Positions 29,801-36,635 of a stretch of DNA of 64,000 nucleotides are shown piece by piece. Under the pieces are notes generated by a model. It was not told the origin of the DNA. It did no database searches and saw only the letters and a list, made by a program, of their open reading frames with translations. The stretch's first letter is position 1. Every line of letters begins with the position of its first letter. The translations under genes and the position numbers were made by a program. Origin of the DNA: Octopus sinensis (Eukaryota). The stretch spans positions 49,786,001 through 49,850,000 of the forward strand of contig NC_043004.1 in the NCBI RefSeq assembly GCF_006345805.1, given 5' to 3'.

Positions 29801-32800
29801 ACTATCTTTCAATCAGTTTTCTTCTTTCCCCCTCTCTCTCTCCCTCTTACATTATCTTTCATTCGGTTTTCTTCTTCTCTCCCCCTCTCTCTCTCATACA
29901 CGCGCGCACAGACCCACCCAAACACCCATCCACACACACACACATACAGTATATGTATAACTGTGACACACACTCTCTCTCTTTCTTGTTTTACATGTTT
30001 CTATATTTACCGTCATTTTAAATATATATACCACTATCATCACCAACCACCACCACCACCACCTTAGCCTATCATCACTTAGAATCTGTCTTCGGCGGTG
30101 GTGAAGGACTCTAACAAAATAATTCCATTTTGTGAATTTAATGAAACTGAGTATTCTAACATTGCCACCAGACTCTCATTGAGTTCCTCCGACTTTGGTG
30201 ATTTTCGTCACATTATCTAATATCGTTTGTTATTGTTTGTTCATAACAGGCTCGTGGTTATCGTGGTAAAAGACGAGGACGTCAGACCAGCGCAGAAAGA
30301 CCGACCAAGAGACATAAAGTTTCACAAACTAGTGAGTATGATTTGAAAACACACGATGTTAGTGTTAAGTCATGTTTAGCCAAAAGCATCGGGCTTCGGT
30401 AATGTAATAGTGTTGGTAGCTAGTCCTATGATTTTGCTAATAGGTTTTAGTCGCAAACAGACATAAATGCCCTCACAGTCCTCCCACCTTTAATCAGTGG
30501 AACTTGGGCATGGAATAGCTGGAAGAGGAGAGGGTCGTATCTGCACCCGACTAGTACTCATTCAACTGATTAAACAAAATAAAATGTCTTTGTTAAGGAC
30601 TCAGGGCCGCTTGGTAATGGAATCGAACCTTATGAATGTGAAGCCGACACTAGATCAAGCACTTTCACATGGTATGATAAATACTGTAACGTGAACTTCA
30701 GAAAATTTATACATTCAGTCTAATGTATAATTTTTTATTGTGTAAATATATTTATGTACAATAAAAAGACAGCGATTTATATATAACTAAACTGTTGACA
30801 CAAAGGCAGAGGAAATAAAAAAAACAATGGTTTCTGATTTAGGCACAAAGCCAGCAATGCGACTGGTACTTTACTCTACCGGTCTTGAATAGAGAAAAGG
30901 CAAAGCTGACCCACAGAGAACTTGTAGCAAGGTAGAATCGTTAGCATGCCGGGCGAAATGCGTAGCCGTATTTCGTCTGCCGTTGCGTTCTGAGTTCAAA
31001 TTCCGCCGAGGTCGACTTTGCCTTTCATCCTTTCGGGGTCGATTAAATAAGTACCAGTTACGCACTGGGGATCGATGTAATCGACTTAATCCGTTTGTCT
31101 GTCCTTGTTTGTCCCCTCTATGTTTAGCCCCTTGTGGGTAATAAAGAAACAGATATTCTCAAGGAAACACTAGGCGTCGACGAATCTCAACAGGGTAGTC
31201 TGTTCCGGGGAATATGGAAAATTTATAGAAATCCCTGGCCTGGCAGTGCTACTGAGGTGGGGGGGGGGTACTACTGATTCAAAGTAAACTCCACAAACAC
31301 GGAAGTGCAATCGGCTCGCTCTATTTGAGATGTGCGCAGAGCAACGAAACCGTATTGCACTCAATCTTTTTAGTGTGGGAGCATTACTGATTTGTGGCAG
31401 GAGGGACAAATAAGTATGTCACCGAGCTCACCGTGGAAATTGCCGGCCACCGTTCTTTGGCAGTCAGATTTCCTATCAATGCCAAAAGAAGTCGTGTGTC
31501 ATCATCATCATCATCATCTATTATTATTATTATTGTTGTTGTTGTTGTTGTTAGTAATAGTAGTAGTAGTAGTAGTAGTTGTTGTTGTAATAGTTGTAGT
31601 AGTAGTAGTAGTAGTAGTAGTAGTAGTAGTAGGAGGAGGAGGAGGAGGAAAAGAAACGGAACAATAAATATATTTACTAAATTAATTATAACAACTGATG
31701 ATTGACAATGTTTTATTTGTGTATTTTTCAGATTCAGTGTTATGTTCCTGTCCACCATTCGAATGCACGTGTTCTCAGCGTACAAGCAGTGCAAATAGCG
31801 TTCCATCCGGGCCTTTTCCAACTTGGATGTCTGGAACTGTGGATAACAATGATAGTTATATCCAGAACTCATTCTTGCCATCAAACCCCGAAGCTATGCC
31901 TTCATATCATCAAAACAATATGGTTAATGACTGTCGTATTTCGCCAACAAATAGACCGGATATCTGTGAAACAAAGCAACTTCCTGCTGTGTACCCTATG
32001 CAACCTCGCCTTAAACTCGGTCAGTCTCCGCTCAGGTCACCGCTGACTTCATTAAGTCGAAGTGTTGGACACACGAATATAAACCGCACGTTCGAGCTAG
32101 AGTCATGTGACAAGATACCAGTTGAAGAGTGGACTATTACAAAACGACGGTCTCAGTGTGAATATGAAAGCCATTTTGACAGAAGTGTTTATACACCAGG
32201 TAAACAGCAGGATTCGATGTTTTACCGCAACAGACAAGTTACCTACAGTACAATATATTCTGGTTTGCCCAGTCTTCCCTATGATACATACAGCACACCA
32301 CAGCAACATCGAGCCCCTTCAGATAACTTCAATTTGAATGGAAGTTGGTCAAACCGCCATCCACGTAATAGTCCCAACCCCGAGTTTGGATGGGAACATG
32401 GAAGCGGTAATATATCTTGTGTAAAACCGGCTGAAAATAGAGACTACCCGTCCAGACAAGGGTCTTATAGGGAATCTGCTTCATGGCTTCCTGAGCATGA
32501 AACAAGACCTTCTCAGATGCCCTCAGCAACCCGAGGCATGGCCGACATGTGTTGCTCTTACCCACCTAAACATAGTTCTTTAAGGGAGCCAATCAAAATG
32601 GACCTGCATGATGATGTAAAACCGTGTCCAACTATTTTAGACAGTTATCCCTCGAAAACAAGACTTTCCAGCGTACCAGATCGTTCTTCTGCTTCGATAT
32701 CTCCATGTTTTCTCGAACTGAAATCCACTTCAAACTTCTCCAAAAGTCTGACAGACACCGATCCAAACCTGACCGGCGAAGCTGACAAACATGACAATCG

Positions 32801-33080
32801 AAAATCAGATTACCACTGGCTTCGCTTTCAGGAACCTATTACACCCGCACCATCGTCGTTTGATAGAGATTCCTTGACATTCGACCCCTTACACCCTAGC
32901 AACTCAAGTAAAGGTCCTCGCACCGAAATGCAGATCCCCTGCATGCAAAATTGTGATTATGACGGGAATTTAATTCCTGTCTATGGTGACCAATCAGCGT
33001 CTTCAACAGCCAACGGTTGTAATTCTATGAAACAAAATTTGTGTAACCACAGCATTAATATAACCCTTACGTACAGTTAG
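26662..33080 (+). CDS. gcm: Glial cells missing (GCM-domain) transcription factor, spliced CDS join(26662..26802,28095..28347,29069..29283,30250..30331,31732..33080), 679 aa
   Basis: The joined exons read [10 protein letters not shown]|[19 protein letters not shown]...[32 protein letters not shown]...[15 protein letters not shown]|KPCPNSKC...[14 protein letters not shown]...[14 protein letters not shown], the diagnostic GCM domain. All four introns are GT-AG with compatible phases (0,1,0,1). Total length is 2040 nt = 680 codons including the TAG. Confidence 0.96.
27076..27686 (+). mobile_element. Family C element in a gcm intron, with a tandemly repeated 5' end
   Basis: Same element; four tandem copies of the ~20-nt aaatgccctgatgcagtat head. 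Confidence 0.85.
27770..27960 (+). mobile_element. SINE family A 3' half, in a gcm intron
   Basis: ttgacaaccggtg...ccagcatggccgcagt...actgaaa matches the family-A 3' half. Confidence 0.7.
28095..28347 (+). CDS. gcm: gcm exon, N-terminal half of the GCM domain (253 bp)
   Basis: ttccag acceptor, gtgagt donor at 28348; encodes [27 protein letters not shown] and [10 protein letters not shown]. Confidence 0.97.
29069..29283 (+). CDS. gcm: gcm exon, C-terminal half of the GCM domain (215 bp)
   Basis: ttttcag acceptor, gtacgt donor at 29284; encodes [20 protein letters not shown] and [13 protein letters not shown]. Confidence 0.97.
29520..29700. repeat. (CT)n/(TATC)n/(TGTC)n microsatellite in a gcm intron
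   Basis: Direct reading. Confidence 0.95.
30250..30331 (+). CDS. gcm: gcm exon with a basic, NLS-like segment (82 bp)
   Basis: taacag acceptor, gtgagt donor at 30332; encodes [27 protein letters not shown]. Phase 0 in and phase 1 out match both neighbours. Confidence 0.88.
30378..30784 (+). repeat. Left arm of a 407-bp inverted duplication
   Basis: Reverse complement of 36229-36635 with 8 substitutions and no indels by manual comparison. Confidence 0.97.
30925..31150 (+). mobile_element. SINE family B, tail type 1, in the last gcm intron
   Basis: Matches the 44596 and 52528 units. Confidence 0.88.
31499..31650. repeat. Compound (TCA)(TAT)(TGT)(TAG)(GGA) tract before the terminal-exon acceptor
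   Basis: Direct reading. Confidence 0.92.
31732..33080 (+). CDS. gcm: gcm terminal coding exon, S/P/T/D-rich putative PEST and transactivation region
   Basis: atttttcag acceptor ending at 31731; 1349-bp complex-sequence open frame continuing in phase 1 to TAG at 33078-33080. Confidence 0.92.
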
Positions 33081-33219
33081 AGACACACAAGAGGGTATTA
33101 TATGGTGTTTATAATCTTTATACTTTCATATGCTTATGGACGTTGAACAAAATTATTTCCTTTAAAAGGAAAAGATAATATATATTTATTTTTCAAATTT
33201 AGATTTGAATATATTTTAC

Positions 33220-36200: not shown

Positions 36201-36228
36201 GTCTTCTCAAAAATATGTTTTGCTTGAA

Positions 36229-36635
36229 ATATATAAATCGCTGTCTTTTTATTGTACATAAATATATTTACACAATAAAAAATTATACATTAGACTGAAT
36301 GTATAAATTTTCTGAAGTTTACGTTACAGTATTTATGATACCATGTGAAAGTGCTTGATCTAGTGTCGGCTTCACATTCATAAGGTTCGATTCCATTACC
36401 AAGCGTCCCTGAGTCCTTAACAAAGACATTTTATTTTGTTTAATCAGTTGAATGAGTGCTAGTCGGGTGCAGATACGACCCTCTCTTCTTCCACCTATTC
36501 CATGCCCAAGTTCCACTGATTAAAGGTGGGAGGACTGTGAGGGCATCTATGTCTGTTTGCGATTAAAACCTATTAGCAAAATCATAGGACTAGCTACCAA
36601 CACTATTACATTACCGAAGCCCGATGCTTTTGGCT
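36229..36635 (-). repeat. Right arm of a 407-bp inverted duplication
   Basis: Reverse complement of 30378-30784. Confidence 0.97.

What the first reader, a model, noticed from the sequence alone, without database searches (positions are those of the whole stretch)
30378..36635. 407-bp, 98% identical inverted duplication bracketing the gcm terminal (activation-domain) exon
Seen: 30378-30784 and 36229-36635 are reverse complements with 8 substitutions and no indels. The left arm begins 46 nt after the preceding donor. The 5.4-kb spacer holds the entire 1349-bp last coding exon and the proximal 3' UTR. The unit is not a young transposon: it has no TSD or TIR, and it contains an old decayed SINE head (~36330-36450) plus apparently unique flank. 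It therefore looks like a local duplication that is recent or kept homogeneous by gene conversion. Hypotheses: (a) recombination between the arms flips the exon, toggling full-length versus DNA-binding-only GCM as a polymorphic or somatic inversion; (b) in read-through pre-mRNA the arms form a ~400-bp duplex that loops out the exon and is an ADAR substrate, relevant given extensive A-to-I editing in coleoids; (c) it is a neutral repair scar or a haplotype-assembly artefact.
Basis: partly seen in the sequence, partly recalled or inferred. Interest (0 to 1): 0.72.

Follow-up and report, generated by a model that had tools for sequence, protein, structure and literature searches.

The report
Young inverted duplicate flanking octopus gcm exon
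A 407-base stretch of DNA downstream of the octopus gcm gene was copied backwards into the gene's last intron in the ancestor of Octopus vulgaris and O. sinensis; it looks like an ordinary, probably harmless scar of DNA repair, not a switch.

Summary
30378-30784 and 36229-36635 are reverse complements: 407 nt, 8 substitutions, no indels, sharp edges. They bracket the last gcm coding exon (31732-33080). The window is Octopus sinensis. An independent O. vulgaris assembly has both arms at the same sites, so this is not an assembly artefact.

O. bimaculoides has only the right arm, and it aligns without a break through both unit edges. The left site there is empty: 11 bp sit where the 407 bp are. 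So the right arm is old intergenic DNA, and the left arm is a copy inserted after the split from O. bimaculoides. The insertion has no target-site duplication, no poly(A) tail, an 11-bp target loss and 2 bp of microhomology at one junction.

Three of the 8 differences separate left from right arms in both species; the rest are private to O. sinensis. The arms therefore evolve independently, and their similarity reflects youth, not gene conversion. The spacer is collinear in all three species, so no inversion is seen. The right arm lies about 1.7 kb beyond the conserved post-stop block (probable 3'UTR).

Best reading: a lineage-specific inverted dispersed duplication made by break repair or template switching, probably neutral. 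Genome-wide copy number, inversion alleles and RNA editing could not be tested here.

The parts
30378..30784 (.). Left arm: the derived copy, inserted in gcm intron 4, 46 nt after the exon 4 donor
   Evidence: Present in O. sinensis and O. vulgaris. Absent from O. bimaculoides, where 11 bp (AGTTGCACACC) occupy the site. It is 98.0% (sinensis) and 99.3% (vulgaris) identical to the reverse complement of the right arm.
36229..36635 (.). Right arm: the ancestral source segment in DNA downstream of gcm, 3.1 kb past the stop codon
   Evidence: The orthologous sequence in O. bimaculoides (L002 18646-19046) aligns continuously through both unit edges into the flanks, at the same divergence as the flanks.
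30376..30379 (+). Left junction of the insertion: 2-bp 'AG' shared by target and template (microhomology)
   Evidence: Target in bimaculoides ...GTTTAG|AGTTGCACACC|AACTAAAC...; template ...AGATG|AGCCAAAAG...; product ...GTTTAGCCAAAAG....
30783..30786 (+). Right junction of the insertion: blunt, no microhomology, no A-tail; the target resumes at AACTAAACTG
30250..30331 (+). gcm coding exon 4 (82 nt, basic stretch [12 protein letters not shown]...KRHKVSQT), donor GT at 30332
   Evidence: Read from the sequence and matched to the 679-aa proteins P0001, P0005 and P0006.
31732..33080 (+). gcm last coding exon (1349 nt, 449 codons, no Pfam domain), inside the spacer
33081..34500 (+). Conserved post-stop block, probably the 3'UTR
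   Evidence: 0 substitutions in 1417 aligned nt between O. sinensis and O. vulgaris, against 0.5-1.5% further downstream. 95-96% identity to O. bimaculoides, except 90.0% in the 33535-33784 bin, against 90-93% in intron 4 and 79.5-95.4% further downstream outside the 34535-34784 microsatellite bin.
26662..29286 (+). gcm coding exons 1-3 (GCM DNA-binding domain, PF03615)

Best explanation
The pair is a lineage-specific inverted dispersed duplication.

In the common ancestor of O. vulgaris and O. sinensis, after the split from O. bimaculoides, a break occurred in gcm intron 4. It was repaired by inserting a copy of an arbitrary 407-bp stretch of non-coding DNA lying about 5.5 kb downstream on the same chromosome, in reverse orientation. 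The source stayed intact and 11 bp of the target were lost.

The likely route is copying by polymerase template switching (MMBIR/FoSTeS-like, or synthesis-dependent end joining) or capture of a copied fragment by end joining. The arms are alike because the event is young, about twice as old as the vulgaris/sinensis split on very small counts. Nothing is keeping them alike. Since then they have drifted independently at about the local neutral rate.

The structure is most likely selectively neutral. Its potential consequences are rare recombination between the arms that would flip and destroy the last exon, and a long RNA duplex in read-through transcripts. These are by-products, not functions.

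Shown: presence and absence across species, polarity, junction anatomy, independent evolution of the arms, collinearity of the spacer.
Inferred: the repair pathway and neutrality.
For: - Exact 407-nt inverted match with sharp edges.
- The window is O. sinensis CM016866.1, 100% identical over 26.4 kb. O. vulgaris carries both arms at orthologous sites. O. bimaculoides carries only the right arm.
- Empty left site in O. bimaculoides: 11 bp replaced, no TSD, no A-tail, a 2-bp AG microhomology at one junction and a blunt join at the other.
- The right arm is seamless with its flanks in O. bimaculoides, so the unit edges mean nothing in the source.
- Arm-to-arm distance is 0.7-2.0%, against about 8% between either arm and the bimaculoides right arm. 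The copy was therefore made well after that split.
- Sites 30466, 30555 and 30676 separate left from right arms in both species. The other five differences are private to O. sinensis. No site groups arms by species.
- The spacer is collinear in all three species.
- Between sinensis and vulgaris the arms differ by 0.25% (left) and 0.98% (right). Neighbouring non-coding DNA differs by 0.5-1.5%, and the post-stop block by 0/1417.
- The published signature of MMBIR templated insertions is an insertion near, and inverted relative to, its template, with microhomology at the junctions (PMC8421209).
Against: - Microhomology is minimal (2 bp and 0 bp), so template switching is not distinguished from simple end-joining capture.
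- Described MMBIR-type templated insertions are mostly tens of bases from templates within about 100 bp. This one is 407 bp from 5.4 kb away.
- Only one outgroup with alignable non-coding DNA was available. In Argonauta only the exons align.
- Genome-wide copy number of the unit was not measured.
- The unit ends 19 nt after an AATAAA (chance about 2-2.6% per end and strand), which hints at an RNA intermediate.
- Neutrality is inferred from substitution counts that are very small.
Confidence: 0.8

Rival explanations
1. RNA-templated origin. The left arm is a cDNA copy of the 3' end of a minus-strand transcript that terminates at about 36229, inserted at a break (endonuclease-independent retro-insertion or templated-sequence insertion).
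For: Read in the left-arm orientation, the unit ends 19 nt after AATAAA (30760-30765), the canonical spacing for cleavage. Only 2.1-2.6% of window positions have that property per strand. Reverse-transcriptase-bearing elements are present in the region.
Against: There is no poly(A) remnant at the junction: the sequence after the unit is the target's own AACTAAACTG. There is no TSD. No minus-strand gene is evident downstream. The region is AT-rich, so the hexamer may be coincidence.
Confidence: 0.1
2. Functional RNA duplex. In gcm pre-mRNA that reads through to 36.6 kb the arms pair, loop out the last exon, attract ADAR and modulate splicing, retention or stability of gcm RNA in the vulgaris/sinensis lineage.
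For: The arms would form a duplex of about 403 bp, -728 kcal/mol. Across metazoans A-to-I editing mainly targets dsRNA formed by young, low-divergence repeats (PMC9989829).
Against: The constrained post-stop block ends near 34.5 kb, about 1.7 kb before the right arm, so the right arm probably lies outside the normal transcript. The left arm sits in an intron whose 3' splice site is transcribed 4.5 kb before the right arm, so splicing is likely to remove it first (inference). The arms accumulate substitutions at a neutral-like rate without compensation. The pair is absent from O. bimaculoides, which encodes a 679-aa protein of the same length and in the same 90%-identity cluster. A terminal exon has no downstream donor for back-splicing (inference).
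Confidence: 0.06
3. Invertible segment. Recombination between the arms flips the 5.4-kb spacer as a germline polymorphism or somatic switch between full-length and DNA-binding-only GCM.
For: Inverted repeats of this size can in principle support homologous recombination. A product truncated after exon 4 would keep the GCM domain and the basic stretch.
Against: Both reference assemblies and the outgroup have the same orientation. Perfect identity tracts are short: at most 91 nt in sinensis and 120 nt in vulgaris. No exchange between the arms is visible in the substitution pattern. The structure is young and limited to sister species. Inversion would remove two thirds of the protein of a developmental regulator (inference).
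Confidence: 0.02
4. The unit is a member of a dispersed mobile-element family, and the two copies are near each other by chance.
For: It contains a B-box-like motif. Genome-wide copy number was not measured.
Against: No TSD, TIR or tail. The right copy has no discrete edges relative to O. bimaculoides. The left copy is within 1-2% of the same species' right arm, and that right arm is orthologous to, and about 8% diverged from, the bimaculoides copy. There is no third copy in the 64-kb window or in the roughly 59 kb of other-species sequence fetched that lies outside the arms' own loci, whereas a real SINE gives 12 matches (about 10 copies) in the window.
Confidence: 0.02
5. Assembly artefact, or an ancient inverted repeat lost from O. 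bimaculoides and kept alike by gene conversion.
For: Only one informative outgroup was available.
Against: Two independent assemblies share both arms and the arm-specific substitutions. No site groups arms by species. The bimaculoides site holds 11 unrelated bp, not a clean excision.
Confidence: 0.02

Closest known systems
Templated insertions from microhomology-mediated template switching (MMBIR/FoSTeS) and templated or inverted insertions at double-strand breaks (PMC8421209; PMC11724301, seen as title and abstract)
   Same: An insertion that copies nearby sequence in inverted orientation, with the template retained, target bases lost instead of duplicated, a short microhomology at one junction, and fixation as a germline or evolutionary variant.
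   Different: Much longer (407 bp against mostly 10-100 bp) and much further from its template (5.4 kb against about 100 bp or less in the published detection scheme). One junction is blunt.
Dispersed duplication with insertion-site deletion (inverted 'dDUP-iDEL' class of human structural-variant catalogues; from my own knowledge, the term was not found in the paper search)
   Same: The same topology: a small segment duplicated to a nearby site, inverted, with a few bases deleted at the insertion point.
   Different: Here it is a fixed difference between octopus species, and it happens to bracket a coding exon.
Inverted Alu or other young repeat pairs flanking exons, which form intramolecular dsRNA, are hyper-edited by ADAR and can promote circular RNAs (PMC9989829 for the repeat-dsRNA-editing link)
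   Same: A young, low-divergence inverted pair in and near one gene that could form a long duplex if co-transcribed.
   Different: The arms are not transposon copies. The bracketed exon is the terminal one. The distal arm probably lies beyond the 3'UTR. No RNA data were available.
Inverted duplications at inversion breakpoints from staggered breaks (Drosophila inversions; from my own knowledge)
   Same: Single-copy sequence ends up as an inverted pair flanking a segment.
   Different: That model requires the intervening segment to be inverted relative to the ancestor. Here it is collinear with O. bimaculoides.

Membership tests
Transposable element insertion (SINE, MITE, Helitron, LINE fragment) | Target-site duplication flanking the new copy | tested here: not met
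   Empty site in O. bimaculoides: 11 bp of the target are replaced and nothing is duplicated.
Transposable element insertion (SINE, MITE, Helitron, LINE fragment) | Terminal inverted repeats, or an A-rich or simple-repeat tail | tested here: not met
   The ends AGCCAAAAGC... and ...GATTTATATAT are not complementary. There is no tail at the junction.
Transposable element insertion (SINE, MITE, Helitron, LINE fragment) | Every copy has the same discrete edges relative to unoccupied orthologous DNA | tested here: not met
   The right copy aligns seamlessly into its flanks in O. bimaculoides.
Transposable element insertion (SINE, MITE, Helitron, LINE fragment) | Many dispersed copies in the genome | not testable with these tools
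   Only the pair is found in the 64-kb window and the fetched loci. No octopus genome could be searched. A protein-database proxy proved insensitive: the arm ORF gave 0 hits, but a control high-copy SINE gave only 1.
Templated inverted insertion / dispersed duplication by break repair or template switching | The insertion is a copy of nearby sequence and the template is retained | tested here: met
   The left arm equals the reverse complement of the right arm 5.4 kb away. The right arm is intact and orthologous in all three species.
Templated inverted insertion / dispersed duplication by break repair or template switching | Derived state: absent at the insertion site in an outgroup, and younger than that split | tested here: met
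   Empty site in O. bimaculoides. Arm-to-arm distance is 0.7-2.0% against about 8% to the bimaculoides copy.
Templated inverted insertion / dispersed duplication by break repair or template switching | Microhomology at both junctions | tested here: inconclusive
   2 bp (AG) at one junction and 0 bp at the other, judged against a proxy for the ancestral target that is about 8% diverged.
Inverted duplication at inversion breakpoints (staggered-break model) | The segment between the arms is inverted relative to the ancestral arrangement | tested here: not met
   Window 30785-37084 is collinear with L002 12848-19526.
Concerted evolution of repeats by gene conversion | Paralogous arms within a species are more alike than orthologous arms between species | tested here: not met
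   sinL-vulL 1 difference and sinR-vulR 4, against sinL-sinR 8 and vulL-vulR 3. Three sites are diagnostic for left versus right in both species; none is diagnostic for species.
Processed retrocopy / RNA-templated insertion | Poly(A) tail and TSD; 3' end at a polyadenylation site of a transcribed source | tested here: inconclusive
   No tail and no TSD. An AATAAA lies 19 nt before the unit end. Whether the source is transcribed is not testable here.
Invertible DNA switch | Both orientations of the segment exist | tested here: not met
   One orientation in O. sinensis, O. vulgaris and O. bimaculoides references. Populations and tissues are not testable here.
Exon-flanking inverted repeat acting as a dsRNA/ADAR substrate | Both arms lie in one transcript and show clustered A-to-G mismatches | not testable with these tools
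   No octopus RNA data were reachable. Conservation suggests the 3'UTR ends near 34.5 kb. The duplex itself is predicted at -728 kcal/mol.

The most novel reading that the evidence does not exclude
The inverted pair, which arose only in the O. vulgaris/O. sinensis lineage, is co-transcribed in read-through gcm pre-mRNA. It would form a roughly 400-bp duplex that is hyper-edited or triggers nuclear retention, giving these species a lineage-specific brake on a glial/neural fate regulator. Alternatively it occasionally recombines to give exon-flipped null alleles that segregate in populations.
Probability: 0.06. Interest if true: 0.5.

Novelty: new member of a known kind. Interest (0 to 1): 0.17.

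Why it matters
It matters little for gcm biology. O. bimaculoides lacks the pair yet encodes a 679-aa protein in the same 90%-identity cluster, 97.4% identical over the last exon.

Its value is as a cleanly resolved example of a small inverted dispersed duplication in a cephalopod genome. Source, target, empty site, junctions and relative age are all visible. It shows that near-identical inverted pairs around exons in these repeat-rich genomes can arise by break repair and not by transposition. It also gives a lineage marker for the vulgaris/sinensis clade.

If RNA data ever showed co-transcription of the arms, it would be a natural test of what a 400-bp exon-bracketing duplex does in an animal with very active ADARs.

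Tried and rejected
- Copy number through the protein database. The longest stop-free translation of the arm (66 aa) found nothing among 5.8 billion proteins. A control with a 70-aa translation of a true high-copy SINE from the same intron found only one protein. The negative therefore says almost nothing, and I do not use it.
- Argonauta hians as a second outgroup. Only the gcm exons align, non-coding DNA does not, and there is no arm homologue.
- Logan contigs carrying the last exon (L005-L007, another octopod, about 86% identical). They cover only 31610-34575 and break at microsatellites on both sides, so they say nothing about the arms or the transcript ends.
- tRNA or SINE identity of the arm core. 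ARAGORN, Rfam (E<=10) and nhmmer against the window all found nothing. Only an 11-nt B-box-like match was found.
- The other 'inverted repeats' (I2-I25) are (TATC)n/(GATA)n and (CA)n/(TA)n microsatellites. They are common throughout the window and are not an extension of the duplication.
- Staggered-break inversion model: rejected because the spacer is collinear.
- Site 30693 looked like a homoplasy that might indicate conversion. The most parsimonious reading is a private G-to-A change in the O. sinensis right arm that happens to match the bimaculoides base.
- A literature search found no paper on octopus gcm structure.
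Full report
**Observation**

The repeat finder reports arms 30378-30784 and 36229-36635: 407 nt, 98% complementary, 5444 nt apart. 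A direct comparison gives 8 substitutions and no indels. Similarity falls to background immediately outside all four edges. blastn and nhmmer at E<=1 find no third copy in the 64-kb window. A match of this length and identity is far beyond chance.

The remaining 'inverted repeats' are (TATC)n/(GATA)n and dinucleotide microsatellites. These recur throughout the window and are unrelated to the pair.

**Gene context**

The bracketed ORF (31732-33080 after the acceptor) is 100% identical (as rounded; one residue differs) to the C-terminal 448 residues of a 679-aa protein. That protein is annotated 'transcription factor glial cells missing 2-like' in Octopus vulgaris. It has counterparts in O. bimaculoides and O. 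sinensis, an 83% relative in Argonauta hians and a 67% relative in cuttlefish.

tblastn and reading of the sequence give five coding exons: about 26662-26805, 28092-28352, 29068-29286, 30250-30331 and 31732-33080.

The last exon has no Pfam domain. Calling it the 'activation domain' is an inference from other GCM proteins, not something shown here.

**Species comparison, the decisive evidence**

I fetched the gcm loci with 10-kb flanks. They show that the window is O. sinensis CM016866.1, 100% identical over 26,419 nt.

- **O. vulgaris.** This independent assembly has both arms at orthologous positions (L001 13507-13913 and 19468-19874) and a collinear spacer.
- **O. bimaculoides.** It has only the right arm (L002 18646-19046). 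Its alignment to the window jumps from 30379 to 30785 across 11 bp.

Written out:

- O. bimaculoides: GTCATGTTTAG-AGTTGCACACC-AACTAAACTG
- O. sinensis and O. vulgaris: GTCATGTTTAG-[CCAAAAGC...TTTATATAT]-AACTAAACTG

So the left arm is an insertion that replaced 11 bp. It has no target-site duplication and no A-tail. It shares 2 bp (AG) between target and template at one junction and nothing at the other.

The right arm in O. bimaculoides aligns without interruption through both unit edges into the flanks. The 407-bp 'unit' therefore has no identity of its own in the source. It is an arbitrary piece of old non-coding DNA.

For contrast, a genuine SINE copy about 150 nt further into the same intron (about 30937-31130) is also absent from O. 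bimaculoides. That family gives 12 matches (about 10 copies) in the 64-kb window.

**Age and mode of evolution**

Among the four arms, 8 sites vary.

- **Diagnostic sites.** Three sites (30466, 30555, 30676) separate left from right arms in both species. One is derived in the left arm and one in the right arm, judged against O. bimaculoides.
- **Private sites.** Five are private to O. sinensis, four in the right arm and one in the left.
- **Species grouping.** No site groups the two arms of a species against those of the other.

Distances:

| Comparison | Differences / aligned nt |
|---|---|
| Left vs right arm, O. sinensis | 8 / 407 |
| Left vs right arm, O. vulgaris | 3 / 407 |
| Left arms, sinensis vs vulgaris | 1 / 407 |
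| Right arms, sinensis vs vulgaris | 4 / 407 |
| Any arm vs the bimaculoides right arm | 31-33 / 389 (about 8%) |

From these I conclude three things.

- The copy was made well after the bimaculoides split and before the vulgaris/sinensis split. It is roughly twice as old as the latter, on very small counts.
- The arms have diverged independently since then.
- Gene conversion is not needed to explain 98% identity.

An assembly artefact is excluded, because two independent assemblies share the arm-specific substitutions.

**Is anything constraining or using the pair?**

| Region, O. sinensis vs O. vulgaris | Substitutions |
|---|---|
| First 1.4 kb after the stop codon | 0 / 1417 |
| Last exon | 1 / 1349 |
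| Distal spacer | 1.47% |
| Right arm | 0.98% |
| Beyond the right arm | 0.48% |
| Rest of intron 4 | 0.74% |
| Left arm | 0.25% |

Against O. bimaculoides the post-stop 1.4 kb is 95-96% identical, except for one 250-nt bin at 90.0%. Intron 4 is 90-93%, and the sequence beyond 34.5 kb ranges from 79.5% to 95.4% outside the microsatellite bin at 34535-34784. That contrast is modest; the sinensis-vulgaris counts carry the argument.

Together these place the end of the constrained 3'UTR near 34.5 kb, just before a long (CA)n/(TA)n tract. The right arm is about 1.7 kb further on, in DNA evolving at the background rate.

The arms would form a duplex of about 403 bp, -728 kcal/mol, if they met in one RNA. 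Young inverted repeats are the usual ADAR substrates in animals (PMC9989829). But pairing in cis would need two things: read-through about 3.5 kb past the stop, and survival of intron 4 until the polymerase has travelled 5.4 kb. This is inference, and there were no RNA data to test it.

For recombination, the longest uninterrupted identity is 91 nt in O. sinensis and 120 nt in O. vulgaris. All three references have the same spacer orientation.

**Mechanism of origin**

The anatomy is:

- an inverted copy of a nearby template;
- the template retained;
- target bases lost, not duplicated;
- minimal microhomology.

This matches repair of a break, or of a stalled fork, by copying from a nearby template, as in MMBIR/FoSTeS-type templated insertions. 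Their published signature is an insertion close to, and inverted relative to, its template with junctional microhomology (PMC8421209). It also matches end-joining capture of a copied fragment. The event is larger and further from its template than the typical described cases, and with 2 bp and 0 bp of microhomology I cannot tell the sub-pathways apart.

One oddity points elsewhere. In left-arm orientation the unit ends 19 nt after an AATAAA, a placement expected for only 2-2.6% of positions per strand. This would fit a cDNA of a minus-strand transcript. The lack of any A-tail or TSD, and of a visible minus-strand gene, keeps this a minor rival.

The staggered-break inversion model, which also yields inverted duplications, is rejected because the spacer is not inverted.

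**What could not be done**

- No octopus genome could be searched, so copy number rests on comparative logic. An attempted proxy through the protein database is uninformative: a control SINE returned only one hit.
- Only one outgroup has alignable non-coding DNA.
- No reads or transcripts were available for inversion alleles, transcript ends or editing.

**Verdict**

This is a real, well-bounded, lineage-specific inverted dispersed duplication: a repair scar, most likely neutral. The gene-conversion idea and the artefact idea are refuted. The inversion-switch and dsRNA ideas remain untested, with the indirect evidence leaning against them.

Noticed in passing
window 30937-31130: A SINE copy in gcm intron 4 is present in O. 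sinensis and O. vulgaris but absent from O. bimaculoides. It is a second lineage-specific insertion in the same intron, about 150 nt from the left arm. The same family gives 12 matches (about 10 copies) in the 64-kb window.
   Followed up: partly
window 33081-34500: The 1.4 kb after the gcm stop codon has 0 substitutions in 1417 nt between O. sinensis and O. vulgaris, against about 1% nearby. It is a strongly constrained probable 3'UTR that ends at a long (CA)n/(TA)n tract.
   Followed up: partly
window 30760-30784 (= 36229-36253 on the minus strand): An AATAAA lies 19 nt before the end of the duplicated unit. This hints at a possible minus-strand polyadenylation site at the source, or it is coincidence in AT-rich DNA.
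   Followed up: partly
window 30378-30784 and 36229-36635: All five substitutions that arose in the arms after the species split are on the O. sinensis side (4 in the right arm, 1 in the left) and none on the O. vulgaris side. In 2 kb around the right arm the private changes are 11 (sinensis) against 5 (vulgaris). This may be a real rate difference or residual assembly error.
   Followed up: partly
window 16237-16336: A run of 100 N, an assembly gap, about 10 kb upstream of gcm.
   Followed up: no
window 1699-2226 (-) and 47169-47649 (-): Decayed mobile-element coding fragments: a reverse transcriptase (RVT_1) and a DDE_1 transposase split over two frames. Other long ORFs at 5385-7572 and 39757-40089 have no Pfam hit.
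   Followed up: partly
window 44604-44991 and 52540-52928: Two places where the same SINE family occurs as a head-to-tail pair (a full copy followed by a copy starting at unit position 43). This suggests a dimeric variant of the element.
   Followed up: no
P0001-P0004 (C-terminal exon proteins): Within the otherwise fast-evolving C-terminal exon, the two ends are nearly invariant from octopus to cuttlefish, and in a distant 381-aa relative of unknown origin (Logan contig): [11 protein letters not shown] at the start and KQ(N/Q)[12 protein letters not shown] at the very C terminus.
   Followed up: no
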